Positions 15,104-55,400 of a DNA stretch of 64,000 nt are shown one piece after another. Source of the DNA: Mobula hypostoma (lineage: Eukaryota); contig NC_086097.1 in assembly GCF_963921235.1 (NCBI RefSeq), positions 17,980,001 to 18,044,000 on the forward strand, written 5' to 3'. The notes under the pieces are model-generated. The model saw nothing but the letters and a program-made list of their open reading frames with translations. It had not been told where the DNA came from and did not search any database. How positions within the stretch are numbered: the stretch's first letter is position 1; every line of letters starts with the position of its first letter. The translations under genes were made by a program, and so were the position numbers.

Positions 15104-15240
15104 ACAACAGGAATTCTGCAGATGCTGGAAATTCAAGCAACACACATCAAAGTTGCTGGTGAACGCAGCAGGCCAGGCAGCATCTGTAGGAAGAGGTGCA
15201 GTCGACGTTTCAGGCCGAGACCCTTCGTCAGGACTCACTT
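15104..15240 (-). mobile_element. Short PLE pseudo-LTR insertion (hammerhead + tail) nested in a young CR1
   Basis: Near-identical to 18319-18451; 10-bp TSD TGTGAGGTTA at 15094-15103 and 15241-15250; interrupts CR1 ORF2. Confidence 0.9.
15200..15235 (-). ncRNA. Minimal type I hammerhead ribozyme
   Basis: 36-nt motif identical to 18416-18451. Confidence 0.78.
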
Positions 15241-16129
15241 TGTGAGGTTATCCACTTTGGTGGCAAAAACAGGAAAACAGATTATTATCTGAATGGTGGC
15301 AGATTAGGAAAAGGGGAGGTGCAACGAGACCTGGGTGTCTTTATACACCAGTCATTGAAAGTGGGCATGCAGGTACAGCAGGCAGTGAAAAAGGCGAATG
15401 GTATGCTGGCATTCATAGCGAGAGGATTCGAGTACAGGAGCAGAGAGGTACTACTGCAGTTGTACAAGGCCTTGGTGAGACCACACCTGGAGTATTGTGT
15501 GCAGTTTTGGTCCCCTAATCTGAGGAAAGACATCCTTGCCATAGAGGGAGTACAAAGAAGGTTCACCAGATTGATTCCTGGGATGGCAGGACTTTCATAT
15601 GAAGAAAGACTGGATGAATTGGGCTTATACTCGTTGGAATTTAGAAGATTGAGGGGGGATCTTATTGAAACGTATAAAATCCTAAAGGGATTGGACAGGC
15701 TAGATGCAGGAAGATTGTTCCCGATGTTGGGGAAGTCCAGAACGAGGGGGTCACAGTTTGAGGATAAAGGGGAAGCCTTTTAGGACTGAGATTAGGAAAA
15801 ACTTCTTCACACAGAGAGTGGTGAGTCTGTGGAATTCTCTGCCACAGGAAACAGTTGAGGCCAGTTCATTGGCTATATTTAAGAGGGAGTTAGATATGGC
15901 CCTTGTGGCTGAAGGGATCAGGGGGTATGGAGGGAAGGCTGGTACAGGGTTCTGAGTTGGATGATCAGCCATGATCATACTGAATGGCGGTGCAGGCTCA
16001 AAGGGCTGAATGGCCTACTCCTGCACCTATTTTCTATGTTTCTATGTCAGATAATGGAAATCACATGATGAAATTGATGTTACTGCCAAAGTTTCTGGAT
16101 TCACACAAGTTGTACAATTCACCCTCTGC

Positions 16130-17650
16130 ACATAGAACAGTAGAACACCCCCACAATGTTGTGCTGACCAATAGAAACACACTCCACAATCCTCCTAACA
16201 TTTTCTTCTCACACAACCTATAATGTTCTGTTCTTCTTACTTCCTCATGCCTAGTTAAGAGACTTAATTGTCCCTATTGTATCAGCCACCCCCAGCAGTA
16301 CATTTCAGGCACTCACCACTCTATGCAAAACTGCTCCCTAACCTTTTCTTCACTCATCTTATTGCCCTACAGTATTGGCCATTGCTGCCCTGGGAAAAAG
16401 GCACTTACTGTCCACTCTATCTACACCAAGTTGTTTCTATCCTCCTTCGCTCCAATGAAAACAGCCCAAGTTCACTCAATCTTTCCTCATCAACCATTCT
16501 CTGTCCAGGTTGCCTCCTGGTAAATCTCCTCTGTCCCCTCTCTAAGGCTTCCTTGTCCTTCCTAGGGTGACCAGCATTGAACGTAATTCCCATAGCAGTT
16601 AGCGTGATGCTATCACAGATCGGGGCATTCCAGAGTTCAATTCCAGCCCAATCTGCAAGGAGTTTGCAGGTGCTCCCCATGGAAGGCACAGGTTTTCCCC
16701 CAGGTCCTCACATAGTCCAAAGATGTACCAGGTAGGTTAACAGTCATTGAAATTGCCACAGAATTAGGTTAGGGTTGCACTGTATCTCTAAATTAGTAAA
16801 TCCAAATGTGGTCTAACCTGTGTTTATAGAGCCATATTACCTCACAACCCTGACCTCAATCCCCTGTCAAACCCAATGAAGGCCAGCACACCACCTACCT
16901 TCTTAACCACACCTTTATCAACTTCCAAGGCAACTTTGAGTAATTATGGAATTTGGCACCAAGATCCCTCTGTTCCTCCACACTGCAAAGAATCCTGCAT
17001 TAAACCTGTACTCTGCCAAAGCCTATCACTTCACATATTATGGGAATAAAATGCATCATCATAAACTATGAAAACCTTCTACACAATCCACAACATCTCC
17101 AACCTTTGTGTTATCTGCAAACTGAGAACCCACCCCTCCACTTCCCCAAGTCATTTATAACAAAAAAGACCCAGAGCAGATCCCTTCAGAACACCAGTAG
17201 AACCAACTTCCAGGCAGGCAGAATAGACTCCACCTCATGCCACAATTCCTATGCTTTGAGTCACTGAATGAGTTTAACATGGAAACCTTGCTAAACTTTA
17301 CTAAAATCCATATATACCACATCCAACACTTTACCTTCATCAATTTCTCCTGACACTTCCTTTGAGAAGCTCTATTATCCACTTGCCTGCTACTTGATCC
17401 GGTGTGGTGGAGGTTCCCCAACCTGGGGGCCACAGACTCCGCAGTTGAAGATCAAGGTCCATGGTATTTAAAAAAAAGAGTTAGGAACTCCTGTAGTATG
17501 GCTTCTCTTCTAGTTTGCCTATGCATATACTGTGTCAGGAATCCTTCCTAGACACAAATTTTACCTCATCTAAACCTTTTGCACTAAGGTGCCAATCATT
17601 ATTAAGGACATTGAAGTCACTCGTGCCAACAACCCTCTTATTTTTGTACC
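16130..17650 (-). mobile_element. Highly decayed CR1 fragments with a nested tRNA-derived SINE (~16590-16790)
   Basis: ALERGQRRFTR..ERLSELGLFSLERRR on the minus strand. Confidence 0.6.
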
Positions 17651-17779
17651 TTTCCAGAATTTGACTATTGGCTACTCAGGGTCCTTTTGGCTATTGGAGG
17701 GCCTATAGCAAATAGATACTAAAATGAAACCTCATGTCTCAGACTAAAATGGATTTAAGCACAAACATAGTTGTCTTAT

Positions 17780-17785
17780 TTTATT
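17780..17785 (-). terminator. Candidate polyadenylation signal (AATAAA) of NPC2-A
   Basis: AATAAA on the minus strand ~220 nt after the stop, in unique AT-rich sequence. Confidence 0.5.
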
Positions 17786-18004
17786 ATTGGTCCATGCAGG
17801 GTTAGTTTACAAAATTGATCTATATTAAAAGTCAAGAACATGTCACAGAATTTCTAAAAAAATGACATTATGAAATTACAAATTTGTTCAAGTTCTTAAA
17901 TGAAAATTGTTCTTTTGTACAGTTTGGCTTAATTTTCCATTGTGCAGTTGATTAAACAATCTTCAAAATGAAAAAAAAAATCAGCTGTTATTAGAGCTGG
18001 TGAT

Positions 18005-18091
18005 TTAGCTGGAAATCTCAATGGGAATCTCCCAACAGAAGATGTCTCTGTCCTTATCGTCCTGCAGCTGCCATTTAACCAGCAATTTAAC
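18005..18091 (-). CDS. NPC2: NPC2-A exon 4 (last coding exon)
   Basis: tccctgcag acceptor, [31 protein letters not shown]. Confidence 0.93.
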
Positions 18092-21000
18092 CTGCAGGGA
18101 TAGAAAGGAAATGCTGTCATATAAGCATATCACAAAGAACCATCTGCAACAATCAAAACTTTTCAATTTCATGCCTCACTCCATTGGTGACCTCACATAT
18201 TCAGAGACAACAGACACTTAACAGCTAAAACCATATCCGGTAACACTATTAAATGCACTAGCCATTTTCCAGAAAGTTCTGGAAATAATCACCAGTCTCC
18301 AACTGATAACGATATGGAAACAACAGGAATTCTGCAGATGCTGGAAATTCAAGCAACATACATCAAAGTTGCTGGTGAACGCAGCAGGCCAGGCAGCATC
18401 TATAGGAAGAGGCGCAGTCGACGTTTCAGGCCGAGACCCTTCGTCAGGACTAACTGAAGGAAGAGTGAGTAAGGGATTTGAAAGCTGGAGGGGGAGGGGG
18501 AGATGCAAAATGATAGGAGAAGACAGGAGGGGGAGGGATGGAGCCGAGAGCTGGACAGGTGATTGGCAGAAGGGGATACGAGAGGATCATGGGACAGGAG
18601 GTCCGGGAAGAAAGACGGGGGGGGGGGGTGACCCAGAGGATGGGCAAGAGGTATATTCAGAGGGACAGAGGGAGAAAAAGGAGCGTGAGAGAAAGAATGT
18701 GTGCATTAAAAAGAGTAACAGATGGGGTACGAGGGGGAGGTGGGGCCTAGCGGAAGTTAGAGAAGTCAATGTTCATGCCATCAGGTTGGAGGCTACCCAT
18801 ACGGAATATAAGGTGTTGTTCCTCCAACCTGAGTGTGGCTTCATCTTTACAGTAGAGGAGGCCGTGGATAGACATGTCAGAATGGGAATGGGATGTGGAA
18901 TTAAAATGTGTGGCCACTGGGAGATCCTGCTTTCTCTGGCGGACAGAGCGTAGATGTTCAGCAAAGCGGTCTCCCAGTCTGCGTCGGGTCTCACCAATAT
19001 ATAAAAGGCCACATCGGGAGCACCGGACGCAGTATATCACCCCAGTCGACTCACAGGTGAAGTGATGCCTCACCTGGAAGGACTGTTTGGGGCCCTGAAT
19101 GGTGGTAAGGGAGGAAGTGTAAGGGCATGTGTAGCACTTGTTCCGCTTACATGGATAAGTGCCAGGAGGGAGATCAGTGGGGAGGGATGGGGGGGACGAA
19201 TGGACAAGGGAGTTGTGTAGGGAGCGATCCCTGCGGAATGCAGAGAGAGGGGGGGAGGGAAAGATATGCTTAGTGGTGGGATCCCGTTGGAGGTGGCGGA
19301 AGTTACGGAGAATAATATGTTGGACCCGGAGGCTGGTGGGGTGGTAGGTGAGGACCAGGGGAACCCTATTCCTAGTGGGGTGGTGGGAGGATGGAGTGAG
19401 AGCAGATGTACGTGAAATGGGGGAGATGCGTTTAAGAGCAGAGTTGATAGTGGAGGAAGGGAAGCCCCTTTCTTTAAAAAATGAAGACATCTCCCTCGTC
19501 CTAGAATGAAAAGCCTCATCCTGAGAGCAGATGCGGCGGAGACGGAGGAATTGCGAGAAGGGGATGGCGTTTTTGCAAGAGACAGGGTGAGAAGAGGAAT
19601 AGTCCAGATAGTTGTGAGAGTCAGTAGGCTTATAGTAGACATCAGTGGATAAGCTGTCTCCAGAGACAGAGACAGAAAGATCTAGGAAGGGGAGGGAGGT
19701 GTCAGAAATGGACCAGGTAAACTTGAGGGCAGGGTGAAAGTTGGAGGCAAAGTTAATAAAGTCAACGAGTTCTGCATGCGTGCAGGGAGCAGCGCCAATG
19801 CAGTCGTCGATGTAGCGAAGGAAAAGTGGTGGACAGATACCAGAATAGGCACGGAACATAGATTGTTCCACAAACCCAACAAAAAGGCAGGCATAGCTAG
19901 GACCCATACGGGTGCCCATAGCTACACCTTTAGTTTGGAGGAAATGGGAGGAGCAAAAGGAGAAATTATTAAGAGTAAGGACTAATTCTGCTAGACGGAG
20001 CAGAGTGGTGGTAGAGGGGAACTGATTAGGTCTGGAATCCAAAAAGAAGCGTAGAGCTTTGAGACCTTCCTGATGGGGGATGGAAGTATATAGGGACTGG
20101 ACATCCAAGGTGAAAATAAAGCGGTGGGGGCCAGGGAACTTAAAATCATCGAAAAGTTTAAGAGCGTGAGAAGTGTCACGAACATAGGTCGGAAGGGATT
20201 GAACAAGGGGTGATAAAACAGTGTCGAGGTATGCAGAAACGAGTTCGGTGGGGCAGGAGCAAGCTGAGACAATAGGTCGGCCAGGACAGGCAGGTTTGTG
20301 GATCTTGGGTAGGAGGTAGAAACGGGAAGTGCGGGGTGTGGGAACTATAAGGTTGGTAGCAGTGGATGGGAGATCCCCTGAGCGGATAAAGTCGTTGATA
20401 GTGTGGGAGACAATGGCCTGGTGCTCCTTAGTGGGGTCACGATCGAGGGGTAAATAAGAGGAGGTATATGGGTTTGTTATTGTTACAGGTACTGATCCAG
20501 ACAGATCATGCCAAGCATAATTATGCAAGACAGTACAAAGAAAAAAGTATTGTGTAGCTTAATCTTGACATCCAAAAATCACAAGATTTATAACCACCAG
20601 AACCCCCGTTTGCCAGAATTTAACCTATGGCCTTAATTAATCCCCCCTCCCCACCACCAGAGATCACTGCAGACCCAACGAATTCAGAAACCACAACTAC
20701 CTGACAGAGGTTACAGTCTACAGTTTCCCCTTATTAATAGCTAAAGATGCCAAATGCAGAAGAGAAACCAGAACAGATGAGTGGGGTATAGTGAACAAAT
20801 AGTATCAGGACAGGGACCTCTAGCTATCAACAGCAAAAGGTGTTTTTCTTGTCCCCTCTGTTTCCCAAAAGAATTTTACACATTGCAAATCAGACTTTAG
20901 AAAGTTCAATTACTTTTCACTATTCTTTTATTTGTAGCAAGCAACTTGGGAAATCATTTACTCCTGACTCCCTTCTTCCATAAACACACACAATTGTTAA

Positions 21001-27000: not shown

Positions 27001-30000
27001 TAAATATTGGAAACTACAGCACGAGATAACAATGCAGTTCATTCACCTCCAGTACAACCCCACTTCAGAGACCATATCACATAAAGCTGGACAGAGCTAC
27101 GGAGAAATGAATTGGTTAAGATCGAAAGAAACCAGAGAGCTGCCACTCCAAAAACGAAGACTATGCTTCCTCTCTTGTAGCCACTTCCCACTCAACTACG
27201 ACAGCCACAACCACCAGCAGGAATTACAAAAAACAGCTTTCGCAAAGTCCAAATCGCTCTTTAGTACCAATGCTTTATAAATGGTTAGATTCCCTGAGGT
27301 TGTCATAGCTGGGTGTGGTCGTGGGGAATAAGCTCCCACTATATTGAATGCTCCCAATGGCTTATGCCTCAAATAGCTTGTGACAACCAAGTCCAGCTGC
27401 TGGCCCTCACATGTAGCTAGTTACCAAGCCCAGTGGAACCACGGGTGCACAGGCTGGAGCACGAGAACCAGTCGCATCAGGCAGGTGGGGATCATCACCC
27501 ACGGTTGGTAGCTCATCTAACAGGAAAACTCTACTGCCTTGCGGCTATACCCACTCAAGGGGTAGGCTTCAGGAGTAAAAATAGAAGAAACACCTGGAGC
27601 TCGAGTCCCTAATTCAGTTCAACGATGACTGGCAGCTCCTGCGACGCTGCTGGGGCTAAACTGCATCGGTCTCTGCCGTTCCTTTGGATTCATCAGCTGC
27701 GTGGAGAGGGGGGAGCCTGGTATCTGGGCAACAGCTTGTTCCCCATATGGCACTACCCTGACCTGTTTGTGTACAGGCGTGCATGTTACATAGACAGCTG
27801 GCACACAACATCCATGGTTGACCGTGACCAACGAACTGCCTCAAAGAGATAAATGGTTGTTTCTGCATTTTCCCTTCATCTCATTTCTTTCTTGTGATTT
27901 TTGCAATAGTGTCTAATGCATCCAATCCAATTACACTTGTTTTTTTTTAAGATTAGCTTTATTTGTCACATGCACATCAAGGCATGGAGTGAACTACACT
28001 GCTTTGGTTCAAATCAAATCAGCAGACTGCGCTGAAGTAGCAACTGATGGCTGCCACGTTTCTGGCACCAACATAACATGCACACAACTCACAGCCCCTA
28101 ATCCATACATCTTCTGAACATGGGAGGAAACCCAAGCATCTGAGAGCAAACCTGCCCTTTTATGGGGAAAACTTACAAACTCCTTGGAGAGTAGTACAAA
28201 TCAAACATCAAACCCTGATTGCAAAAACGCCATCCCCTTCTCGCAATTCCTCCGTCTCCGCCGCATCTGCTCTCAGGATGAGGCTTTTCATTCTAGCACA
28301 AGGGAGATGTCCTCCTTTTTTAAAGAAAGGGGCTTCCCTTCCTCCACTATCAACTCTGCTCTTAAACGCATCTCCCCCATTTCATGTACATCTGCTCTCA
28401 CTCCATCCTCCCGCCACCCCACTAGGAATAGGGTTCCCCTGGTCTTCACCTACCACCCCACCAGCCTCCGGGTCCAACATATTATTTTCTGTAACTTCCG
28501 CCACCTCCAACGGGATCCCACCACTAAGCACATCTTCCCCTCCCCCACTTTCCGCAGGGATCGCTCCCTACGCGACTCCCTTGTCCATTCGTCCCCCCCA
28601 TCCCTCCCCACTGATCTCCCTCCTGGCACTTATCCGTGTAAGCGGAACAAGTGCTACACATGCCCTTACACTTCCTCCCTTACCACCATTCAGGGCCCCA
28701 AACAGTCCTTCCAGGTGAGGCGACACTTCACCTGTGAGTCAGCTGGGGTGATATACTGCGTCTGGTGCTCCCGATGTGGCCTTTTATATATTGGCGAGAC
28801 CCGACGCAGACTGGGAGACCGCTTTGCTGAACACCTACGCTCTGTTCGCCAGAGAAAGCAGGATCACCCAGTGGCCACATATTTTAATTCCACATCCCAT
28901 TCTGACATGTCTATCCACGGCTTCCTCTGCTGTAAAGATGAAGCCACACTCAGGTTGGAGGAACAACACCTTATATTCCGTCTGGGTAGCCTCCAACCTG
29001 ATGGCATGAACATCGACTTCTCTAACTTCCGCTAATACCCCACCTCCCCCTCGTACCCCATCTGTTATTTATTTTTATACACACATTCTTTCTCCTTTTT
29101 CTTCCTCTGTCCCTCTGAATATACCCCTTGCCCATCCTCTGGGTCCCCCCCCCCGTCTTTCTTCCCAGGAGGTCCCATGATCCTCTCGTATCCCTTTTGC
29201 CTATCACCTGTCCAGCTCTTGGCTCCATCCCTCCCCCTCCTGTCTTCTCCTATCATTTTGGATCTCCCCTTCCCCCTCCAACTTTCAAATCCCTTACTCA
29301 CTCTTCCTTCAGTTAGTCCTGACGAAGGGTCTTGGCCTGAAACGTCGACTGTACCTCTTCCTAGAGATGCTGCCTGGCCTGCTGCGTTCACCAGCAACTT
29401 TGATGTGTGTTGATCAAACCCTGATCTTCATTTGTCTGTATAAAGCATTGCACTAACCGCCATGCTGCCTGACCTTATTTGGGGGGGGGGGGCGCGGAGG
29501 GGCTACTGCACAAAATCAAAGTTGCAGAAACTTGTAAAATTAGTCAACTCCATCATGGATACTAGCCTCTGTAATATCTAAGACATCTTGAAGGAGCGGT
29601 GCCTTACGAAGGCAGCATCCATCAAGGGCCCCCACCACCCAGGTTATGCCCCATTCTCACTGTTACCATACGGTAGGAGGTACAGAAGCCCGAAGGCACA
29701 CACTCAGCTATTCAGGAACAGCTTCTTTCCTTCTGCCAAATAATTCATAATTGGCCATTGAGCCCATGAACACCCTATCGCTACTTTCTTAAAATTCCTT
29801 TTTTTGCATTATTTATTTTATCTTAACTATTTAATAGACATATTTATACTTACTATAATTCAGTTTCTTAATATTCATAATGTATTTCATTTCACTGCTT
29901 GCTGTAAAGTTAACAATTTTATGACATACCTTTGATATTAAAACTGATGTGGATGTATTTTACTACTTTACTATTTTAAAGTAATGAATAAAGTTTAGAT

Positions 30001-33000
30001 CTTTATCCAATTTATCAGTTACATAGAAGGTTGGTTTAGCCATGCAAGTTATCAACTGCATTCCGGCTTCTGTCCCTTGTTTCCAGTCGGGAAGAGTCCC
30101 AACCCAAAACATTTATTCTACTCCATAGATGCTGTTTGACTTGCTGAGTTCATCCAGCATTTTGTGTTACACAGGGTGAAAACAGCTCACTTGTATTGGA
30201 CAAGTTCTTTCTGAACAGAAATGGACTCCACAGAACAGAGCATGGCTTCCATACACAGGCGGTTGAGCACAGCAACCTCACTTACAGCTAATGAAGGTGA
30301 CGTTCACACCATACGTTTTTCCTTTGTGAAGTTGACATGGCAAGGAAGGACAGGCAGTGATATCCACCATGGTAAGATTCCCTGATTTTGAACCTGAAAC
30401 AACAAGAGTTAATGTCAGTTATTTCAGAGATATCCCAGATAAGTAATGAGAGATCGAAGCAGAACACCAACAGGGATTCTGCACGTACAGCAACAGGCCA
30501 TGTCCAGAATGAACTTTAGCCCTCAGACAGTTCCCACCCGAACCACTGGCTTTCAAACAATGAACAGCAACCTTCCCTCACATGAGTGGAATTGCACAAA
30601 TAGTTTTGAAGCATGTGATAGCTGCAGTGAAGAGCTAACAGCTCTCATTTCCAGACCATTTCCCCATAAAACTTAGGAAATGAAAATAATGACAAATACA
30701 GTTGAGGTTCAGTGAAGGGAAATGGTGAACAGGCAGTTTTGAAGAGCACACTGCGAGGAATCACGTGTAGATTAGGCACAGCAAGAAAGGGAACCTTCAA
30801 GAATCTGACATGTTAACGAAAACATTTCAGAATGAACTACCAAAAAGTCTTTACTAAGCTTCAAAGACAAATTTGCTTGTTGAACAGTTCTGTTCAATTC
30901 TGGGGGAAAAGACTCAAGTTATATGAAGAGTACTTTAAATGTAACAAGTGTTTAAACATTGCAATGCAGCAACTCTGTTTCAACAATTAGCCAGCGTTCC
31001 CCAGTGAGGCAGGGCTGTATTCTGCATGACTATTCCGTATGGAAGAGACCAGGGAATAACACCAGAAACCAGATTGATTACGTGCTTATAAGGAGGCATA
31101 GAAATACTCTGAAATCATGCAAAACATATCCAGGTGCAGACTGCTACAGTGATCACGTACCAATAATCAGCGTGATGTACCTGGGACACAGAAAGCTTAA
31201 AAAGACCAAGAGTAGAGCCAAAGCTGAATTTGGGACTTTTGAGGGAAAAAAAGACATCAAAAATGAATTCCAAATAACAGTGAAGAACAAATTCGAGGCT
31301 CTACAAAACATCACTATTATAGAACAACAATGGGAAAACCTCAGACAGCATAACACAAGCAGCAGAAGTGATTCCCAAAAACAACAGAAAAAGGTATAAA
31401 GAATTGGATGACAGAAGAAATTCTGAATCTTATGGAACAAAGAAGAAAATGTAAGGAAAACGAAAAAGCCTATGTATCCTTGCATGCACAGATAACAACC
31501 AAGTGCAAGGAAGCAAAAGAGAAGTGGCTGAAGGACAAATGTGAGTTAATAGAAAAATTGCAGAAGACCAACAACAGCAAACGAGATCAAAGAGGTCACA
31601 AATCGGAAGAAAAGTGGGGTAACAAAAGGATGTATAAAAGCAAAAGACTGCTCTACAATTATGGAAAAAGGAAAAATAATGCAAAAGTAGTCAGAATACA
31701 TCAAAGACCTATACGACGACAAAGACCGAGAGGCCAACTTTGATATTGGCAACAACGAGGGCCCAGCAGTACTGAAAGAAGAAGTGGAACATGTTATGAA
31801 AATGCGAAAGGGGAAATCATCAGGACCAGATAACATTCCAGTTGAACTGCATGAAGCACCAGAAGATTTTGATGTAGAGAAATTACCATTCTTATTGAAT
31901 AGAATATACAGTGGTAAAGTACCAGAATATCTTTTAAAGACAATATTCATTGCACTACCAAAGAAACCAGGTGCAACAGAGTGTGGACAACACAGAACAA
32001 TTAGTTTAATGAACCACCTCACAAAAATTCTACTTAGAATCATCATGCTCAGAATAAGACACAGAATTAAACCAGAGATCAGTGAAGAACAGGTTGGCTT
32101 TGTTGAAAGCAGGGGAACATCAAACAGCACTTGTATTCTCAGGAATATTATCAAAAGGTCAATAGAAGTACAACAAGACCTATACTTCTGTTTCATTGAC
32201 TACACAAAAACCTTTGACACAGTGAAACACCAAGTCATCATGAAAATGCTTAAAAATATTATTATTGATGGAAAAGATCTCAGAATAATCAGGAAGCTCT
32301 ACTGGCAAAGTACAGTCATACGGATAGACAACGAGATGGGTGAGTATCAGCCAATAAAGCGAGGAGTCAGACAGGGTTGTGTTCTATCACCAGACCTGTT
32401 CTCCCTGTACAGTGAAAACATCATGAGAACCATACAAGACCTACCTGGAGGATACAATATCAACAACCTCCACTATGCAATGATACAGTACTGATAGCAA
32501 ACAGTGAAGTAAATTTACAGAAACTAGTATCTACCATCAACACAGAGACCGAAAGACTTGGCCTAACCTTAAACAAAAAGAAAACTGAAGTAATGGTAAT
32601 ATCAAAGAAACCTGATATCCCAAACTGTAGGATTGTATTGGCAAATGAAATCCTGAAACAAGTCCACAACTTCAAGCACCTTGGATCATGGGTAACATCT
32701 GATGGCAAATGCGAAAGAGACATAAAAGCAAGAATAGCAATGGCAAGAACAGCATTTACAGAAATGAGAAACATCCTAATGAACAGGAAGATAGCGATTG
32801 ACATCTGCCTTAGAACTCTCAGCTGCTACATTCTTCCTATATTGATGTACGGCTGCGAGTCATGGACCATCACAAACGCAATGGAAAAACGAATCAATGC
32901 AGCAGAGATGTGGTTCCTCAGAAGAATGCTACGCATATCATATACGGACAGGATAACCAATGAAGAAGTTCTACAGAGAACGAAAACAAAACGTACATTA

Positions 33001-38693: not shown

Positions 38694-38774
38694 GTCCTTT
38701 CCCTATCCGGCCGAGTCAAGGCAAGGAGCAACAGCGGATCCAACTCCGAGGCCTCATATGACTCCGCTGCCCCC

Positions 38775-39010
38775 ACCTCACCCAATCTTGTCCAGAGCTT
38801 TCTCCGCCTCACCCAATCCTGTCCAGAGCTTTCTCCGCCTCACCCAATCCTGTCCAGAGATTTCTCCGCCTCACCCAATCCTGTCCTGAGCTTTCTCCGC
38901 TTCAGCCAATCCCGATGCAAATCCTTTCGAATTTCATCCAATCCCGATTTGGGATTCGCCTACTTCACCCAATCCCGACACGGACTCCTTCCCTCCTCGC
39001 CCAATCCTGA
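38775..39010. promoter_or_regulatory. 31-bp minisatellite / array of eight phased CCAAT boxes upstream of NPC2-A
   Basis: Unit CACCCAATCCTGTCCAGAGCTTTCTCCGCCT; CCAAT starts at 38782, 38813, 38844, 38875, 38906, 38938, 38969, 39001. Confidence 0.8.
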
Positions 39011-39044
39011 CGCGGGCTCCTCCTTCGCTTCCAGTTCCTCATTC

Positions 39045-39420
39045 TCAGGGAGGAGGAGCTGTACTTCTGGATATTTTCCAACCTAATGGCATGGAAATCA
39101 CTTCTCCTTTCGGTAATGCTCTCCTCTCCTTTATTTCGCCACTTTGTTCTCTAGCTGTTCTCCTCCCCTACCGCCTCATCCTTCCAATGTTCCACTCTCC
39201 TCTCCTATCAGATTCCTTCCACTCAGCCTTTCACTCAGCCTTTTCCACCTATCACCTCCCGGCTTCTATTTGAATGCCTCTCGCCTGACTTCACCTACCA
39301 CCTCTAGCTTGTCCTCCTTCCCTTCCCCTGCAGTCCCGAAGAAGCATCTTGGCTCGAAACAACTGTTCACTCACTTCTATAGTTGCTGAGTTCCTCCAGC
39401 ATGTTGTGGGTGTTGCTGTG
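39045..39420 (+). mobile_element. Old degenerate Penelope 3' end + pseudo-LTR
   Basis: Remnant QPNGMEI...FR* resembles the C-terminus [13 protein letters not shown]; followed by a pyrimidine-rich tract, a decayed hammerhead (cagtcccgaagaagcatcttggctcgaaac) and the standard tail. Confidence 0.6.
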
Positions 39421-42324: not shown

Positions 42325-42525
42325 TTCTGAGAAATTCAGCAGGTCAGGAAGCATCTGTAGAGGAATAAACAGTTGACGTTTCAAGCACAGACCCTTTATC
42401 ATGACTGATGAAGGATCTTGGCCTGAAACATTGATAGTTTCCTCTCCATAGGTGCTGACTGATATCTTGAGTTCCTCCAGCATCTTAAGTGTTGCTCTGG
42501 ATTTCCAGTACCTGTAGAATCTCTA
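42325..42525. repeat. Old degenerate inverted PLE-tail dimer joined at the hammerhead
   Basis: cagttgacgtttcaagcacagaccctttatca-tga-ctgatgaaggatcttggcctgaaacattga, with mirrored gcagcatct/ctgctgagttcctccagc-type tails. Confidence 0.65.
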
Positions 42526-44319: not shown

Positions 44320-44406
44320 TTAATTGGAAATCTGTACAGGGATCCTGCAGCAAAAGAGGTCTCGATCAAGCTCATCCTTCAGCTCCCATTCAACCATCAA
44401 TTTAAT
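44320..44406 (-). CDS. NPC2: NPC2-B exon 4 (last coding exon)
   Basis: ttttcccag acceptor, [31 protein letters not shown]. Confidence 0.93.
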   Translation of the reverse strand: MKLMVEWELKDELDRDLFCCRIPVQISN

Positions 44407-47400: not shown

Positions 47401-50400
47401 CAACCAAAGGTATTGTCCTTTTTAAACATTTTATTATTATTATTTTTTTTTTACGATCACAGGACTCTGCTGGTCATTAAGAACTGCAGGTCTATCCCAT
47501 CACAGAGTTACTCGCTGGCTGAGAAACTGAAGGAGCTGAACTTGGATGTGGAATATGCACCAGAGAGGCGTCGGAGGAATCGGTGTGCAGTCTAACAGCA
47601 AGTGATCATCTTAGTAACTCATCTTGTGATAGCAAGACTCTGTTGGACATTGTTAATGTGGAATGCTGCAAATCCGATTCACTAATTTATTAGCAGACGG
47701 CAAGGAAGCAGTGTAGGCTCAGCCGCAGCGAGGACTCCGTCTCAAGCCACGGTGTTACCGTTTACAGCTGCCCATGAGAGATGGCCCATCGGAGGCAGTG
47801 TGACACAGTGTCCAAGCTGCAGTCAGTGGTGCCCCCCGCCCCGTCCCAGCGTTTGCTTGGCAGAAGTCAAGCTGTATTGTGTTCAACTGCAGACTGTTCC
47901 AACATTCATGTGCTCAGGGACATTTTTTTTGTGACTATGTCTTACTGATATCTTGTATGTGCTACATGTGCCTTGTGCTGTGTATGTCAATTGGTACTGT
48001 GTTTTGCACCTTGGCTCCGAAGTAATACTGTTTCGTTTGGCTGCATTCATATGTATTTATGTATGGTTCAATGACAATTAAACTTGAACTTGATAGCAAA
48101 CTACCCTGGCTCCCAGTTCAGCAGTACCTCAATTTCAAAATTCTAACCTTCATTTTCAGAGCCATCCCGTTCCTCAAGCCTACAGTACATCTCTCTGATT
48201 GCCTCAAAATCTCAACCTGCCAAGATGCACAGCCACGAACAACCTGCGAATTTTGTTTCGTTACTTATCCAAGCTTAAAATACTGGTCAGGCATGTCTTT
48301 AGTTCCAAATCTCCAGAGTTCACTTCCTACCCTCCTCCCCACCTCCAAATGCTCTTAAGCTATGGCCATCTCTCCTCCAACTTTCAATCCAGATGAAGGG
48401 TCTCTATCTGAAACACTGGATATCCACTTCTATCCGTAGGTGCTGCCCGATACCCCAGCTCTTCCTTGTAATTATTTTCTCAATTCTATTTTAAAATCCC
48501 TGAATGAATTTTGAGAATCCTTGCAGACAAGAATTTTTCAATGAACAAACGATGATGAGGAAGCAGTATGCATGTGGCAAAATCTGCAAGGACGATCGCG
48601 GCTTGACGATCCACCAAGCATGGATGAAGTGTTTAGCAGGAGCGGCACAACGCGCAGGTAACCAACCTGGTGAGACGAAGGAGGGGCCAGGCCCGGGGTC
48701 ACCGCATAGTGCCCGGAACCTCCAAGTGTTGCAAACTAATCCCTCTAAAATGAAGTCTAACAGGAGGCGGATCAAATGGCCTGCAGCTAACATGACTTCA
48801 CTGTGGAAGCAGTTTGATGAAGATGTTAACCAAATTCTGGAGGAAATGGTGAAGGAAAGGATTGATAGGAAGCTGGAAGCCATGACAACAATTATTGTCA
48901 GTATCGCCCAGTGGAGGTTGGTTGTAGGGGTTTTGCAACCCGTTCCTTAGTTAGAGCCTTCAGCAATTTGGGCTTCGAGGGAGAGAGGAAGAGGAGAGCC
49001 ATCCACAGTACCACCGATGCGGCAGAGAGGGCCTCAAGATGGTTGTGGCTCAAAGAGGGGAGCCATGGAGTCATAAGTAGCTAGCCATCTGGACACAAGC
49101 TGGGGTCTGATCAGCCCCGCTGGGTCACCTGGAGGAGGTTGTATGATGTTGAAAGACCCGAAACACTCAATGATTCCAGGAACATCACTGAAGCTGTGTC
49201 CAGAAGCATCAGTAGATGTATGTACACAGTTTCCATCCCCACACATCTTCCACTTTTTAAAATTTATGTCCCCCATCAATCCCACTTCATCGCATGTGTG
49301 AACTATCAAGAGGAACAATTTTCTCAAGCAATCAGGCACAATATTTTAAAAGTCCTGTTGTCTCATTTAATTTGTCTGAAGGAGAATACCTCAGCTTCCC
49401 TTGCAAGCAAAAATCCTTCACCCCCAGAATCATTAGTAACCTAATGGGTTGATGACAATATTTGGAAAATGCTGAAACAGTTAATTTAAGGTAGTGGCTA
49501 GTGTAATGCTTTATAGTATCCTCACCTGTCTCCCCAAATCAAAAATTTCACTTTTCCCATATTTGCCACCTGTCTGGCTATTCTACAAAATGATTTCCTT
49601 ACTATGTTTTACAATTGGTGTCATTTACACATTATTCACACTTGTGCCAGTTATTGATAAGCAAGAAAAAAACCAGCAGCACACTGGTCTTTACATGTAC
49701 CCTGGGAGACACCACAATCTCCCTCCAACTTCAAAGACTACCATTTCATATTTTCTTAGGTACCCAAGGAGGCCATTCACTTCATGTCCATGCTAGTCCT
49801 CACAGCAATCCCATTCCTCAAATTACCTCCCTGTAATCTATTCTCTCTCGTGTGTCTATTAGTTCCACACCCTCCAGCTCTCCTACCACCACCCCAGCAG
49901 TAATTTGTGTGTGCAAATTAAGAACCACTAGCATACTTTTGGGACGTGGGGAGAAACAACATCCAGAAGGAAAACTCACATCACAGTGAGAACTTGAGAC
50001 AAATCTTAGGGCTGAGCCCAGGTCACTGCACTGAGAGGCAGCACCCAAGTGTTTGGACCACTGTTTTACCATTGCCTCTTATTCCATGAGCCTGAATTTG
50101 AGGATATAGAATTTGAAAAGGTACAACGAAAGGGATCAGATTGCTTTGCAGGAACATTCAATAGACTGCTTTCCTTCTGAGCTGAAGGATTCTCATCTGT
50201 GCTGAGGTTTCTCCTTTGCCAATTTTACACTTTAAAATCAAGACTTACTGCTAGCAAAAGTCACGTTCACAGCATAAGATTGTCCTTTGCGGAGTATACA
50301 CGGCAGCGAGGGGCAAGGTGTGATATCCACTATTAAAATTTTTCCGGATGTAGATCCTGCAATACAATGAATACAGATAGAGATTAACTATAGCTAGTAC

Positions 50401-51755
50401 CAGAAGTTAGTGTTGCACTGGTATACTGTTAAAGCACTAACCTTTATAATTCACAGCAACACACATCAAAGTTGCTGGTGAACGCAGCAGGCCAGGCAGC
50501 ATCTCTAGGAAGGGGTACAGTCGACGTTTCAGGCCGAGACCCTTCGTCAGGACTAACTGAAGGAAGAGTTAGTAAGAGATTTGAAAGTGGGAGGGGGAGG
50601 GGGAGATCCAAAATGATAGGAGAAGACAGGAGAGCTGGGATCTTGGCTCCATCCCTCCCTCTCCTGTCTTCTCCTATCATTTTGGATCTCCCCCTCCCCC
50701 TCCCACTTTCAAATCTCTTACTAACTCTTCCTTCAGTTAGTCCTGACGAAGGGTCTCGTTCTGAATCGTCGACTGTACCCCTTCCTAGAGATGCTGCCTG
50801 GCGTGCTGCGTTCACCAGCAACTTTGATGTGTGTTGCCTGAATTTCCAGCATCTGCAGAATTCCTGTTGTTTGCATTTATAATTCACCAACTTGATTTTT
50901 GTTTAGGATTAATGGCCCTTTATCCCATCCCCCAGCCCACTGGCCCAATTGCCCAGAAATGTATAATCAAAGCAAAAAGCTTGCTCAAACCAGCTTTTGG
51001 AAAGAGAAACAGTTAATGTGCTAGGTCAGACATCCTTCACCAAAACTGAATTACTAGTAGATACTAGATGCAATTAGTCACACAAAACCAAGTTAGAGAA
51101 TGACAATAACGTACCAATAAAACATCAATCTAGGATGTAAATTAGATCAAGCAACACACATCAAAGTTGCTGATGAACGCAGCAGGCCAGGCAGCATCTC
51201 TAGGAAGAGGTACAGTCGACATTTCAGGCCGAGACCCTTCTACTCCAACAGCCACTTTCTCTCAAAGGTGACTTTAATTACAATGGCACATTCAGACTTT
51301 AAAGCACAATAACCAAAACGAAGTTTGTTTTTAAGAGTTAAAGAGCTAATCATGGTTACACTTCAAAAATCGTAGCACGTGGAAAAACTACTAACTCTGA
51401 ATTTTAAGGAGGAAAATAAAATGCTTCGATGACAGTATTATGGCGTCGACGTTTCGGGCTGAGATCTCATCGGGATCTCCAGAATGGATGTTGCCTCCTC
51501 CATCACTTTCAGTGTGTTGCCCAAGATTTTCAGCATCTGCAGAATCTCACGTGTTTGTGCACCAATAACAACAATACTCAAACTTTAGGGCAAATGGATC
51601 ATGCAAAGTATTTTTCTTGTATTTCTACTGAACTGCCGAATAGACCGTAGGATGTTTTAGACAGACTTACCGCAGTCTTTAAACTTCACCGGCTGTGCCG
51701 CACACAACGCGGCCAGGAGCACGAAGCCGAAAGCCACCTGACACCTCAGCTCCAT
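44320..51755 (-). CDS. NPC2: NPC intracellular cholesterol transporter 2, paralogue B (ISCA2-proximal); spliced CDS join(51755-51671,50356-50249,46478-46306,44406-44320), 150 aa
   Basis: Four GT-AG exons of 85+108+173+87=453 nt, phases 1,1,0. Translation: [150 protein letters not shown]. Confidence 0.95.
46306..46478 (-). CDS. NPC2: NPC2-B exon 3
   Basis: ttcttcgcag acceptor, 173 nt, ...[11 protein letters not shown]...[11 protein letters not shown]...KEYPS, GTAAGT donor. Confidence 0.95.
48500..49221 (+). mobile_element. Internally deleted HERO-like (restriction-like endonuclease) non-LTR element; NPC2-B intron 2, antisense
   Basis: N-terminal zinc-finger remnant [20 protein letters not shown] and RRRIKWP joined at ~48908 directly to C-terminal [10 protein letters not shown]...[12 protein letters not shown]; the RT domain is missing. 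Confidence 0.7.
50249..50356 (-). CDS. NPC2: NPC2-B exon 2
   Basis: tattgcag acceptor, 108 nt, (G)[41 protein letters not shown] donor. Confidence 0.93.
50455..50875. mobile_element. Inverted (tails-outward) PLE pseudo-LTR dimer forming a long palindrome in NPC2-B intron 1
   Basis: Arms 50456-50634 and 50659-50837 (179 bp, 4 mismatches), 24-nt spacer; 12-bp TSD TTTATAATTCAC at 50443-50454 and 50876-50887. Confidence 0.92.
50519..50554 (-). ncRNA. Minimal type I hammerhead ribozyme, sense to NPC2-B pre-mRNA
   Basis: Intact 36-nt motif; the mirror copy on + (50739-50774) has GAAA->GAAT and an altered stem II/loop II. Confidence 0.78.
51147..51240 (-). mobile_element. PLE pseudo-LTR fragment truncated inside the hammerhead core
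   Basis: Matches 50455-50545; lacks CUGAC but keeps GAAAUGUC^GACUG. Confidence 0.85.
51671..51755 (-). CDS. NPC2: NPC2-B exon 1 (signal peptide + QPVKFKDCG)
   Basis: ggcATGG start at 51755; G|GTAAGT donor. Confidence 0.93.
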
Positions 51756-52406: not shown

Positions 52407-52468
52407 ATGGTAGTGAGTGGGTTGCTGAGGAGATCTCTGTTAGTTGCCGTTGGATTTTGCTGCAGGAG
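52407..52468 (+). CDS. ISCA2: ISCA2 exon 1 (start of mitochondrial presequence)
   Basis: Strong Kozak aagATGG, Arg/Leu/Ser-rich peptide with no acidic residues, AG|GTGAGC donor. Confidence 0.8.
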
Positions 52469-55400
52469 GTGAGCAAGCAACAATGCGCGTCAGTAGTCAT
52501 TAACGAGTGCTGTCAGCTAGAATAACATCCAAATTTCTGATGAAGGGCCTCAGCCCGAAAGGTCGACTATATTGTTGCCTAACCTGCTGAGTTCCTCAAC
52601 TATTTGCGTGTCTTCCTCCTGGGTTGTCTTTTTAATGAGTTCCTGACGTCCAGTTAATCATATTAAACCAACTGTGTTTCTCATTAGGGATGGCTAAATG
52701 CCCTGGGATCAGCTGTCATTCGGGACTAACACCAAATATGCTTTTCATTTTTTTTACACGAGGATATCAACTTATGTGTTCGCCCTGTTATTTTTTAATG
52801 ATATACAGTATTGTTTATCATCCTGATTAATATTGTTAGGATTATCATTCAGCTAGAAGTGAATATGTGAGTTATTTACAAGCCATTTTACACAGATACA
52901 ACACCAAAGCTTAAATTACCTTTTGTTTATGTATACTTTGGAATTGCGAATATTAGATAATTTTTTTCATGAATACCGATGTGGATCCTTAAACCAAATT
53001 ATCTTTCCACAGTTTCTTGGTGACTTAGTTATGCAGGCGTGAGTAGTACTTTGTCTCCCTGTTGTCAATAATTGCCATTTGCTTGCCATAAATGTTCAAA
53101 CTTGACAGTTCATGCTTCGTCAATGAAACCAAACCATTCTGAAAAACATTGGTGGTTGTTCGTCGTGTTCAACGATGACAAGAAAGCTTGTTTAGGAGTT
53201 TCAAAGATTCAAAGAACATTTATTATCAAAATATATGTGCAGTACACAACCCTGAGATTCGTCTTGCCACTGACAGCCACGAAACAAAGAAACTCCATGG
53301 AACCTTTTCAAAGAAAACAACAAACACCCAACGTGCAAAAAAAAAAACCCAAACGGCAAAAAAAAAGCGAATAACATAGCATATTAAACGCCAAACCGCA
53401 CAGCCTTGAAACAGTCTGGGAATGTTCAGTTTAGTTCAGTTTAGCGCTGTGTGGTACGTTGACTGCAGGCTGTAGAGCCAGGCCACCCCGATTAAAATAG
53501 CAATAAAAAGGGAGTCACCAGAAACACATATAAGGTGACCTGCAGATTCATCTAAATTAGTCCAAACCATAAATTGTGTGGATCAAACCTTGCCCAAGAC
53601 CCAAGACTCCAGCAGCAGAGAGGGAGACAGCGAACTAGGGCTGTTCCATTCTTTCAACCCCAGTGGCCTGGGTTCAGAATTCCCAACTGGGTTTTCCTTG
53701 GTTGCAGTGGATGGCCAATACTACTTCTGTGCCTTGTCACCCCCTCCGCTCTTCACGGAGTGTTGCAGTACTGCCTTGCTGGATGAAATACCATATATAA
53801 ATATGATTGGGTTTTATGCTGTTTGCAAATCGAGCGACATCGGCAACAACACGGTTTCACTTCCAGATGAGCTCATTGTGTTATGTGCTCATTTGACCGT
53901 CAGAACATGGGGAAAATATCATGAACTCCCACAGGCCCCAGTGATGCTACTTTAGTCTCTTGAGGCTGACACGCGAGCAGCCTTCAGGAGGGTGAAAGCA
54001 TGAAAACCACTTGACCCAGCTGGTGCATCTGGCCAAGTACTAGAGACCTGCTGTGGCTGGAGTGCTCACGGAAATCCTTAACCACTTGCTTCGGCAGTCT
54101 GACGTACCCAACTGCTTCAAGCAGGCTTCATTTGCATTGGTGCCCAAGTAGAACGTGGTGACCCGCCTCTGTGACTATCATCCAGTAGCGCTTACACCCA
54201 CAGTGATTAAGTGTTTTAAGAGTTTGGTGATGAAACATATCAACTCCTGCTTGAGAAGCGACTTAAATACGCTCTAATTTTCCTACTGAAGCAACAGGTC
54301 AATAGCAGATGCCATCTCACTGGCTCTTCACTCAACCCTGGTACACCTGGACAGCAAAGATGCAGACTGTACATCAGGATGTTCGTTTTCAACTACAGTT
54401 CAGCACTCAATACCATCGTCCTCTCAAAACTAATCAATACGCTCCAAGACCTTGGCTCAATACCTCCTTGTGCAATTGGATCCCCGATTTCCTCACTTGC
54501 AGACTCTAGTTCGCTCAGACTGGCAGCAACATCTCCTCCATGATCTGCATCAGCACAGGTGCACCAGAAGTCTGTGTGCTTAGTGCCCTGCTCTACTCAC
54601 GTTTCACTTGTGACTGTGTGGCTAAGCACAGCTCCGATGCCATATTCAAGTTTGCTGATGGCACCACTGTCACAGGCTGAGTCAAAGGTGGTGATGGATC
54701 AGCATTCAGGAAGGAGACTGAAAATCTGGCTGAGTGGTGCCATAACGAAGGGAACATTGACTCAGACCATGAGAGGCCTGCGTCGGGCATTTTCATGCCT
54801 TACAAGGCGCAGATTGGAAGTCTGTGTGGGGCGCCACTCCTCTCACAGACCAGAGCAATATGTGATTAAGTGCCTTGCTCAAGGACACAAACGCTGCCAC
54901 AGCTGAGTCTCGAACTAGCGACCTTGAGATAACTACATGAACGCCTTAACCACTTGCTATGTGCCATAACACCAACCTGTTACTCAATGTCAACAAGACG
55001 AAGGAGCTGATTATTGACTTAAGAAGGAAAGCAGAGGTCCATGAGCTAGTCCTCATCAGGGGATCAGAGGTGGAGAAGGTCAGCAATATTAATTTCCTTG
55101 GTATTATCATTTTGTAGGACCTATCCTGGGCCCAGCACCTAAGTGCAATTACAATGAGGGCACGGTAGTGCCTCTACTTCCTTAGAGGTTTGCAAAGATT
55201 TGGCGTGACATCTCAAACTTTGAAAAACTTCTATAGATTGACTGGCTGCATCATAGCCTGGTGTGGAAATACTAATGCCCATGAAAGGAAAATCCTAGTG
55301 GATACAGCCCAGTCCATCACAGGTAAAGTCCTCCCCATGATTGTGCACACCCACATGGAGGGTGGGAGGGTGTCACAGGAAAGCAACATCCATCATCAGG

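What the first reader, a model, noticed from the sequence alone, without database searches (positions are those of the whole stretch)
15200..52570. A family of minimal hammerhead ribozymes spread through the locus by a young Penelope-like element
Seen: every young PLE pseudo-LTR contains AGUC-CUGACGA-AGG[7 nt]CCU-GAA-ACGU-C^GACU. Core-intact copies are at 15200-15235(-), 18416-18451(-), 29315-29350(+) and 50519-50554(-). Broken or decayed copies are at 50739(+), 51214(-), 51445(-), 52537(+), ~42370/42403, ~39332, ~48388, ~35745 and ~30085. Known: CUGANGA/GAAA/NUH is the hammerhead core. PLE pseudo-LTRs carry minimal type I hammerheads whose palindromic stem III is thought to require dimerisation. 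Inference: a very abundant short repeat of this genome is a ribozyme-bearing PLE tail, with more than 10 copies of several ages in 64 kb. That would make a large, probably unannotated ribozyme population.
Basis: partly seen in the sequence, partly recalled or inferred. Interest (0 to 1): 0.85.

Follow-up and report, generated by a model that had tools for sequence, protein, structure and literature searches.

The report
Penelope retrotransposon hammerhead ribozymes in ray
The repeated 36-base motif is real and is the small "hammerhead" self-cutting RNA motif already known to sit in the end repeats of Penelope-like retrotransposons, here found in a devil-ray genome, so it is a correct but ordinary identification.

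Summary
A 36-nt motif occurs exactly at 15200-15235(-), 18416-18451(-) and 50519-50554(-). It has one change at 29315-29350(+) and three at 50739-50774(+). Shuffled sequence gives none.

It lies about 300 nt downstream of a Penelope-like (PLE) reverse transcriptase plus GIY-YIG ORF, on the sense strand, 60-105 nt before the element's 3' end. Best hits are Mobula hypostoma.

All hammerhead core positions are present: CUGANGA, GAA, A15.1-U16.1 and the GUC cleavage triplet. Helix III is only the palindrome ACGU, as in the published minimal, dimer-dependent PLE hammerheads (Cervera and de la Pena 2014).

Related PLEs from two sharks and four metagenome contigs carry the same architecture with compensatory changes. 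A covariance model built only from non-Mobula copies finds eight window copies at E<0.01. Rfam finds none, so standard annotation misses them.

The older copies are decayed.

Cleavage could not be tested: no RNA runs were available, and the active fold is not the predicted minimum-energy fold.

This is a new member of a known kind. The scan has already noted the same family on other DNA of this genome.

The parts
18416..18451 (-). Core-intact minimal type I hammerhead motif; predicted cleavage after C at 18420
   Evidence: external-model hit of 32.7 bits
15200..15235 (-). Core-intact hammerhead motif inside a 137-bp solo 'hammerhead plus tail' insertion (15104-15240)
   Evidence: 10-bp target-site duplication TGTGAGGTTA at 15094-15103 and 15241-15250
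29315..29350 (+). Core-intact hammerhead motif (loop II C>U), in the 3' region of 5'-truncated PLE copy B
   Evidence: external-model hit of 35.9 bits
50519..50554 (-). Core-intact hammerhead motif, in the left arm of a head-to-head inverted pair
   Evidence: external-model hit of 35.3 bits
50739..50774 (+). Broken hammerhead in the right arm of the inverted pair. Two helix II bases and A15.1 are changed.
   Evidence: 3 mismatches; 18.9 bits; 3 of the 4 arm mismatches lie in this motif
50455..50877 (.). Single insertion made of two 5'-truncated PLE tails head to head (arms 50456-50634 and 50659-50837, 98% complementary)
   Evidence: I5; one 10-bp target-site duplication TATAATTCAC at 50445-50454 and 50878-50887
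18747..20528 (-). PLE ORF, copy A. 593 codons open, 5'-truncated, covering about aa 296-887 of an 889-aa homologue. Has RT (YIDD at aa 239), the CKRNKCYTC linker (aa 460) and GIY-YIG (about aa 498-515).
18452..18746 (-). 3' untranslated / pseudo-LTR stretch between the stop codon and the hammerhead. Pyrimidine-rich and poorly conserved between subfamilies.
   Evidence: depth falls 5-20 fold upstream of 18459; many fixed differences
18314..18415 (-). Tail downstream of the hammerhead. It holds a roughly 27-nt block (GAUGCUGCYUGGCCUGCUGYGUUCAYC) conserved between ray and sharks, and a GCAAC/GUUGC hairpin where the short 3' ends fall.
   Evidence: alternative short and long 3' ends
28160..29035 (+). 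PLE ORF remnant, copy B (about aa 619-887 of a full-length homologue). About 96% DNA identity to copy A, in inverted orientation.
   Evidence: (I1, I2)
51147..51240 (-). Young tail copy truncated inside the hammerhead. It starts in helix II and has no CUGANGA box.
   Evidence: (D4); partial model hit at 51218-51240
52533..52568 (+). Old copy with intact core and a GGGC/GCCC helix II. The helix III palindrome and helix I are lost.
   Evidence: 30.2 bits
42337..42519 (.). Old head-to-head inverted pair of tails, both with decayed hammerheads (42369-42408(-) and 42399-42450(+))
48369..48447 (+). Old decayed copy (CAGAUGA box)
   Evidence: marginal model hit at E 0.16
51445..51544 (.). Old small inverted pair: decayed hammerhead at 51445-51475(-) and tail-only arm at 51489-51544(+)
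35732..35859 (+). Old tail copy with a deletion in the first core box
30091..30159 (+). Very decayed tail copy
39312..39418 (+). Very decayed tail copy (approximate limits)
56451..56608 (-).

Best explanation
These are copies of the minimal type I hammerhead ribozyme motif that Penelope-like retroelements carry in their terminal repeats. Here it belongs to a fairly young PLE family of the devil ray Mobula hypostoma. [quoted passage not shown]

Shown: the motif is transcribed as part of the element's sense strand. It lies about 300 nt after the stop codon and 60-105 nt before the 3' end at which reverse transcription starts. It is therefore copied into every insertion that is not truncated beyond it. 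These include 137-bp solo 'hammerhead plus tail' units and head-to-head inverted pairs made in one insertion event.

Inferred from the published class: a single copy cannot form helix III. Two copies, in one tandem transcript or on two RNAs, pair their ACGU tetranucleotides and swap helix I strands. This forms a double hammerhead that cuts after GUC, probably slowly and with help from the element's protein or other factors.

Most of the roughly 15 copies in this window are dead insertions, not working ribozymes.
For: The motif is exact or near exact at five places, with 0 expected by chance.

PLE identity of the host element is shown.

All core positions are present, with the palindromic 15.2-16.2 and the unpaired nucleotide between A9 and 10.1 that Cervera and de la Pena list as class features.

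Homologous motifs occur in both pLTRs of full-length related PLEs: L003 at 329 and 3319, L004 at 2847 and 6138, L007 at 1118 and 5069. They also occur in shark copies L001 and L002.

Covariation supports the structure:
- Helix I changes on both sides in 5 of 6 pairs.
- Helix II has G-C to A-U and U.G to C-G changes.
- Helix III reads ACGU, AUAU or AAUU and is always palindromic.
- 78.9% of cells are paired against 15-41% for slid controls. No shuffle out of 500 reached the observed covariation score.

A covariance model built without any Mobula sequence finds 8 window copies at E<0.01.

In contigs of three other species, only 2 of the 36 motif positions vary at 20% or more. One of these is U11.1 to C, which turns G.U into G-C. 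Each 36-nt flank has 5-6 such positions.

Target-site duplications show true retrotransposition, and one event for both arms of an inverted pair. This fits the PLE enzyme cutting and extending both DNA strands (PMC11167929) and the inverted 5'-truncated partners described for PLEs (PMC8557442).
Against: There is no direct evidence of cleavage. No RNA run holds the sequence, and only assembled contigs were available, which cannot show RNA ends.

The nearest-neighbour model does not favour the active fold. The 36-mer's minimum-energy fold pairs GACG of the core with CGUC at the cleavage site (-10.0 kcal/mol). The double-hammerhead structure scores -9.5, against -28.3 for the best dimer. Z-scores are unremarkable.

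Rfam hammerhead models give no hit even on an 81-nt stretch.

The young Mobula family has G.U rather than the usual G10.1-C11.1.

In the literature these minimal motifs cleave poorly in vitro. In the one PLE reconstituted in vitro, the hammerhead needed protein, was dispensable for insertion, and no RNA-seq reads ended at its cut site.

The comparative set is small, 6-8 sequences, some from decayed copies.
Confidence: 0.85

Rival explanations
1. The motif is a hammerhead by descent and shape, but in this lineage it is kept for something other than self-cleavage. It might be a binding or positioning signal for the element's RT/endonuclease, or a fold that stalls or marks the RNA. In vivo cleavage would then be negligible.
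For: In the Anolis PLE reconstituted in vitro, catalytic hammerhead mutants did not change insertion, and no RNA-seq reads began or ended at the cut site. Minimal PLE hammerheads cleave weakly in vitro. HHR-less Naiad PLEs proliferate very well. Here the active fold is not thermodynamically favoured. A neighbouring tail block is at least as conserved as the hammerhead.
Against: The catalytic nucleotides themselves are what is conserved. Helix sequences drift with compensation, as expected for a working ribozyme. The only frequent change inside the motif across species keeps a pair. Fungal and plant PLE hammerheads are efficient ribozymes.
Confidence: 0.25
2. The abundant form is not simply a 5'-truncated PLE. 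It is a dedicated short non-autonomous element, SINE-like or retrozyme-like, of about 125-140 nt. It consists of the hammerhead plus the tail and is mobilised in trans by the PLE enzyme.
For: The solo 137-bp insertion at 15104-15240 starts 5 nt before the motif and has a clean 10-bp duplication. The scan notes a 124-bp unit of the same make-up elsewhere in the genome (unchecked). Contig depth over hammerhead plus tail is 5-20 times that of the upstream pLTR, with many alignment ends exactly at 18451. A 2026 preprint argues that animal retrozymes derive from PLE pLTRs.
Against: 5' ends in the window are not uniform. Copies start at query positions 12, 32, 106 and 119 of the tail, as expected for ordinary 5' truncation. 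No tandem arrays of the unit occur in the window. The sequences beyond the alignment ends at 18451 resemble diverged pLTR rather than random flanks, so subfamily divergence explains part of the depth step.
Confidence: 0.15
3. The resemblance to a hammerhead is a chance feature of one repeat family.
For: All window copies descend from one ancestral sequence, so the count of 4-5 copies is a single evolutionary observation. Rfam does not recognise them.
Against: The generic descriptor gives 0.01 hits per shuffled 64-kb window on both strands. The motif sits on the expected strand and in the expected place of the very element class known to carry it. It recurs with covariation in PLEs of about 50% protein identity.
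Confidence: 0.01

Closest known systems
Minimal hammerhead ribozymes (min-HHR) of metazoan Penelope-like elements (Cervera and de la Pena 2014, PMC4209133; Lunse, Weinberg and Breaker, cited in PMC6765202)
   Same: It has a type I topology, a full CUGANGA / GAA / A15.1-U16.1 / H17 core and no loop III. Positions 15.2-16.2 are palindromic, implying a dimer. There is an unpaired nucleotide between A9 and 10.1, and helix I is short at 4-5 bp. It lies on the sense strand in the PLE terminal repeat. Most genomic copies are single motifs in truncated elements, with some pairs on opposite strands 100-700 bp apart.
   Different: Helix II is only 4 bp with two wobble pairs, where 6-8 bp was reported for the schistosome families. 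The amplified Mobula subfamily has G.U at 10.1-11.1, whereas relatives and other batoid-like runs have G-C. The host is a cartilaginous fish, a group for which I found no specific description in the papers searched.
Hammerhead of the Anolis Poseidon element PAc (Frangieh et al. 2024, PMC11167929)
   Same: It is a vertebrate PLE with the hammerhead near the repeat/ORF boundary. A 'tail' downstream of it ends at variable RT initiation sites. Insertions are consistent with cutting and extending both DNA strands.
   Different: In PAc the ORF starts inside the ribozyme. In the ray element and in L003 the motif lies about 100-300 nt after the stop codon and, in L003, about 175 nt before the next start codon. 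PAc belongs to the Poseidon clade, whereas the ray ORF has the extra CX4CX2C linker of the Neptune/Nematis type.
Non-LTR retrozymes of animals (Cervera and de la Pena 2020, PMC7229834; Li et al. 2026 preprint)
   Same: They are short non-coding units carrying type I hammerheads with a weak, palindromic helix III. They are thought to depend on PLE enzymes.
   Different: Retrozymes are tandem arrays of 170-400-nt units that give circular RNAs. In this window the motif occurs only in dispersed or inverted PLE 3' ends, never in tandem.
Rfam Hammerhead_1 (RF00163) and the other Rfam hammerhead families
   Same: The catalytic core is the same.
   Different: No Rfam model reports these copies, even at E up to 10 on an 81-nt stretch. 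The likely reason is that the models expect a closed helix III and canonical loop contacts.

Membership tests
Hammerhead ribozyme, minimal PLE type | Core box C3-U4-G5-A6-N7-G8-A9 | tested here: met
   CUGACGA is present in the four intact copies.
Hammerhead ribozyme, minimal PLE type | G12-A13-A14, then A15.1 paired with U16.1, then a non-G at 17 (cleavage site) | tested here: met
   The sequence reads GAA-ACGU-C, then GACU.
Hammerhead ribozyme, minimal PLE type | Type I topology: helix I formed by the sequences directly 5' of C3 and 3' of N17 | tested here: met
   AGUC pairs with GACU, plus a fifth U.G pair. In relatives, 5 of 6 helix I pairs change on both sides.
Hammerhead ribozyme, minimal PLE type | Helix II hairpin with an unpaired nucleotide after A9 and a G10.1-C11.1 closing pair | tested here: inconclusive
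   The unpaired A is invariant in all 8 sequences compared. The closing pair is G.U in the young Mobula family, but G-C in old copy 52533, in sharks, in metagenome PLEs and in most contigs of three other species.
Hammerhead ribozyme, minimal PLE type | No loop III; positions 15.1-16.1 form a 4-nt palindrome, so helix III can form only between two copies | tested here: met
   Helix III is ACGU here, AUAU in L004, AAUU in L007 and GAUC in L006. All are self-complementary.
Hammerhead ribozyme, minimal PLE type | Located in the terminal repeat of a PLE, on the element's sense strand | tested here: met
   It lies about 300 nt downstream of the RT/GIY-YIG ORF on the same strand. It is present in both pLTRs of L003, L004 and L007.
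Hammerhead ribozyme, minimal PLE type | Site-specific Mg2+-dependent self-cleavage | not testable with these tools
   No RNA reads were available; only contigs were, and these cannot show RNA ends.
Rfam Hammerhead_1 (RF00163) | Score at or above the family's gathering threshold | tested here: not met
   There was no hammerhead hit at the gathering threshold, at E<=10 on the whole window, or on 18395-18475.
Penelope-like element (canonical, C-terminal endonuclease) | A single ORF with an RT followed by a GIY-YIG endonuclease | tested here: met
   RVT_1 at aa 84-244 and GIY-YIG at aa 496-570, both just below the Pfam cut-offs. The strong homologues carry DUF8422, RVT_1, HTH_animal and GIY-YIG.
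Penelope-like element (canonical, C-terminal endonuclease) | CX2-5CxxC linker before the endonuclease (Neptune/Nematis clades) | tested here: met
   CKRNKCYTC is at aa 460. The clade criterion is from PMC8557442. No phylogeny was made.
Penelope-like element (canonical, C-terminal endonuclease) | Tandem or partial-tandem copies giving pseudo-LTRs | tested here: inconclusive
   No tandem unit is in the window; both ORF copies are 5'-truncated. Related contigs L003, L004, L006 and L007 show the arrangement.
Penelope-like element (canonical, C-terminal endonuclease) | Inverted 5'-truncated partner copies and a variable 3' tail | tested here: met
   There are three head-to-head pairs. The young one is flanked by a single 10-bp duplication. 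Two alternative 3' ends are seen.
Non-LTR retrozyme | Tandem arrays of short hammerhead-bearing units | tested here: not met
   No tandem copies of the unit occur in the window.

The most novel reading that the evidence does not exclude
The roughly 125-140-nt 'hammerhead plus tail' unit may be an independently amplifying, PLE-dependent mini-element. If so, devil-ray and related batoid genomes could hold one of the largest populations of core-intact hammerheads known in a vertebrate, tens of thousands or more. Many would sit in introns on the sense strand, where two nearby copies could pair and cut host pre-mRNA.
Probability: 0.12. Interest if true: 0.55.

Novelty: new member of a known kind. 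Interest (0 to 1): 0.28.

Why it matters
It adds a cartilaginous-fish lineage, and a very copy-rich one, to the known link between Penelope-like elements and minimal dimeric hammerheads.

It shows that standard Rfam-based annotation leaves these motifs unmarked. A small model built from PLE hammerheads of other species recovers them cleanly.

The cross-clade comparison is a compact, independent confirmation of the dimer model. Helix I and helix II show compensation, and the helix III tetranucleotide is always palindromic.

It does not settle what these ribozymes do for the element, which remains the open question in the field.

Tried and rejected
- **Rfam.** I searched the whole window at gathering thresholds and at E<=10, and the 81-nt stretch around 18416-18451. 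No hammerhead hit appeared. The only strong sub-threshold hits were microRNA models on the 50456-50837 palindrome, an artefact of the inverted tails.
- **Thermodynamic folding.** I folded the monomer, the dimer and the tail. The active fold is not the minimum-energy fold and z-scores are between -0.4 and -1.4, so energy alone gives no support.
- **RNA evidence for cleavage.** No run on record as RNA holds the sequence. All available runs are assembled contigs, which cannot show molecule ends.
- **Copy number.** I did not estimate it from contig depth. The tool warns that the figure is not a copy number, and single-copy depth could not be calibrated.
- **Loci that could not be fetched.** Chiloscyllium, Hypanus and one metagenome locus were unavailable because the sample files were too large or the protein was not on record.
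- **L005.** It showed no motif in the parts inspected.
- **Strict descriptor on other loci.** It found nothing in L001-L003 because of a C at core position 4 or a short helix I. Relaxed patterns and inspection were needed.
- **MAFFT alignment.** It misaligned L006 and L007 by one column after helix II. I left these two out of the model and the pair counts and parsed them by script instead.
- **Copies A and B as one insertion.** I looked for a shared target-site duplication around copies A (18314-20528) and B (28160-29412). None was evident.
- **Lunse et al.** The paper is not held in the library.

Full report
**1. The observation**

The 36-nt string AGUC-CUGACGA-A-GGGUCUCGGCCU-GAA-ACGU-C-GACU is present exactly at 15200-15235(-), 18416-18451(-) and 50519-50554(-). 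It has one loop change at 29315-29350(+) and three changes at 50739-50774(+). None is expected in dinucleotide shuffles.

A generic minimal-hammerhead descriptor that I wrote finds these four copies and nothing else in the window. Shuffled windows give 0.01 hits on average. The descriptor requires:
- a helix I of 4 bp;
- the CUGANGA box;
- an optional unpaired base;
- a helix II of at least 3 bp;
- GAA;
- A, a palindromic inner sequence, then U;
- a non-G at position 17.

Because the copies descend from one sequence, the meaningful statistic is that one repeat family carries the motif. That is itself unlikely by chance for a 3-kb element.

**2. What carries the motif**

On the minus strand, 18747-20528 is an open frame of 593 codons with RVT_1 and GIY-YIG matches. 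It contains YIDD, a CKRNKCYTC linker and the GIY-YIG block.

A database search gives 1060 homologues. The best, at 94%, are Mobula hypostoma models. Full-length relatives of about 890-930 aa carry DUF8422, RVT_1, HTH_animal and GIY-YIG.

Copy A covers about aa 296-887 of such a protein. A second, inverted copy at 28160-29035(+) covers about aa 619-887. No other PLE coding remnants are in the window.

The motif lies about 300 nt after the stop codon on the coding strand. A tail of 60-105 nt follows it, ending at one of two alternative 3' ends.

**3. The copies**

BLAST with the tail finds about 15 copies.

Young copies are 90-98% alike:
- The two ORF-linked 3' ends.
- A 137-bp solo unit at 15104-15240, flanked by a 10-bp duplication.
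- A 423-bp insertion at 50455-50877 made of two tails head to head, flanked by a single 10-bp duplication.
- A copy truncated inside the motif at 51147-51240.

Older copies are decayed. They include two more head-to-head pairs, at 42337-42519 and 51445-51544.

One-event inverted pairs fit two published observations. The PLE enzyme cuts and extends both DNA strands in vitro (PMC11167929). Inverted 5'-truncated partners are typical of PLEs (PMC8557442).

**4. Is it a hammerhead?**

Every conserved core nucleotide is present. Helix III is reduced to the self-complementary ACGU. This is the defining trait of the minimal PLE hammerheads, thought to act as dimers (PMC4209133; PMC6765202).

I fetched related PLE loci by their proteins:
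- *Whale shark (L001) and zebra shark (L002).* Their copies keep the block from the core box to GUC almost unchanged, while the flanks diverge.
- *Metagenome contigs L003, L004 and L007.* These hold full elements of about 50% protein identity, with the motif in both terminal repeats.

Parsed structurally:
- Helix I is AGUC/GACU in the ray, UACU/AGUA in L003, ACA/UGU in L004 and GCAC/GUGC in L007.
- Helix II always follows an unpaired A. It changes G-C to A-U or C-G, and U.G to C-G or U-A.
- Helix III reads ACGU, AUAU, AAUU or GAUC, always a palindrome.

On a six-sequence alignment, 78.9% of cells pair, against 15-41% when partners are slid. Seven of 12 pairs show changes on both sides, and no shuffle out of 500 reaches the observed covariation score.

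A covariance model built from the four non-Mobula sequences alone finds the ray copies at 29-36 bits, with E from 1e-8 to 1e-6. It finds eight window copies at E<0.01.

**5. Conservation against flanks**

Assembled contigs of seven coded organisms were laid on 18300-18760 at 80% likeness. Thousands of contigs match.

Depth is highest over the tail and high over the motif. It is 5-20 times lower upstream of 18459. Many alignments end exactly at 18451 or 18415/6, the two edges of the motif.

In three more distant organisms, the only frequent changes within the 36 nt are these:
- U11.1 to C, which restores G-C.
- The outermost helix I base.

The 36 nt on either side carry 5-6 frequent changes each (13 rows were not shown by the tool).

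A 27-nt block further down the tail is equally conserved. It may be the enzyme's recognition or initiation region, by analogy with PAc. That is inference only.

**6. What could not be shown**

No RNA data exist for this sequence in the runs offered, so cleavage is untested.

Energy models do not favour the active fold. The monomer's best fold pairs part of the core with the cleavage site. The double hammerhead scores -9.5 kcal/mol, against -28.3 for the best dimer. Z-scores are ordinary.

This agrees with the weak in vitro activity and protein dependence reported for such motifs. It leaves open the rival view that in vivo cleavage is minor.

**7. Comparison with the known, and novelty**

The association of minimal dimeric hammerheads with PLE terminal repeats is established. 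It is described as universal for canonical PLE clades. A 2026 preprint extends it to retrozymes and includes one cartilaginous fish. I found no paper on elasmobranch PLE hammerheads.

The ray family differs only in detail: a short wobble-rich helix II, and G.U at 10.1-11.1. It is a new member of a known kind.

The practical point that Rfam misses all copies is worth recording.

The scan had already noted this family in other windows of the same genome. Those notes are unchecked and were not used as evidence. Exceptions are the arm-mismatch observation and the one-event origin of the palindrome, which I re-derived, and the species lead, which I confirmed.

Noticed in passing
window 50456-50837: The head-to-head PLE tails form a near-perfect 179-bp-arm hairpin. 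It scores up to 100 bits against several microRNA precursor models in Rfam, all below their gathering scores. It would be a likely false positive in permissive miRNA annotation.
   Followed up: partly
window 50739-50774 versus 50519-50554: Of the 4 mismatches between the two 179-nt arms of the single-event palindrome, 3 fall inside the hammerhead of the + arm (GC>TT in helix II, and A15.1>T). None is a CpG transition. The chance of 3 or more out of 4 landing in 36 of 179 nt is about 0.03. This could be reverse-transcription error in a structured stretch, or coincidence.
   Followed up: partly
L003:329-372 and L003:3319-3362; L001:4675-4718; window ~51445 and ~39332: Several copies have C instead of U at core position 4 (CCGA, not CUGA). 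They include both terminal repeats of an apparently intact 889-aa metagenome PLE. U4 is normally invariant. Either this is a tolerated natural variant or that element's ribozyme is inactive. CpG decay runs from CCGA towards CTGA, so the direction of change is not obvious.
   Followed up: no
L007:1118-1158 and L007:5069-5109: This PLE's hammerhead has the U3-A8 covarying core (UUGAUAA) that Cervera and de la Pena reported as an exceptional variant. Helix III is AAUU and helix I is GCAC/GUGC.
   Followed up: partly
L006:3249-3288: The inter-ORF repeat of a tandem PLE carries a hammerhead-shaped motif with a 6-nt first box (CUUUGA) and G-C at 15.1-16.1 (GAUC). Helices I and II are kept, but the core is non-canonical.
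   Followed up: no
window 18382-18408(-) and the same block in L001 and L002: A roughly 27-nt block of the tail (GAUGCUGCYUGGCCUGCUGYGUUCAYC) is conserved between ray and shark PLE tails as strongly as the hammerhead itself. The linker between the two diverges. It is a candidate recognition or initiation signal for the RT.
   Followed up: partly
window 18314-18352, 29405-29412, 50448-50456: Tails end at two alternative points: a short form just after a GCAAC/GUGUUGC hairpin, and a long form about 45 nt further on. This fits internal, variable initiation of reverse transcription as described for PAc.
   Followed up: partly
one search hit list (P0002, P0004): Some NCBI gene models of Mobula hypostoma and Hypanus sabinus named as host proteins match this PLE ORF at 78-88% identity. 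Examples are chitinase domain-containing protein 1 isoform X1 and divergent protein kinase domain 1C isoform X2. This suggests transposon ORF pieces were merged into host gene models.
   Followed up: no
window 38766-38920: A 31-bp minisatellite with about five copies lies here (family D15). It is unrelated to the PLE.
   Followed up: no
window 4500-6000, 10500-11950, 14500-15950, 21400-22300, 36150-36870, 57700-60150: Several other interspersed repeat families occur in direct and inverted copies of 60-85% identity (D1-D14, I8-I25). They are not PLE-related by protein search and were not identified.
   Followed up: no
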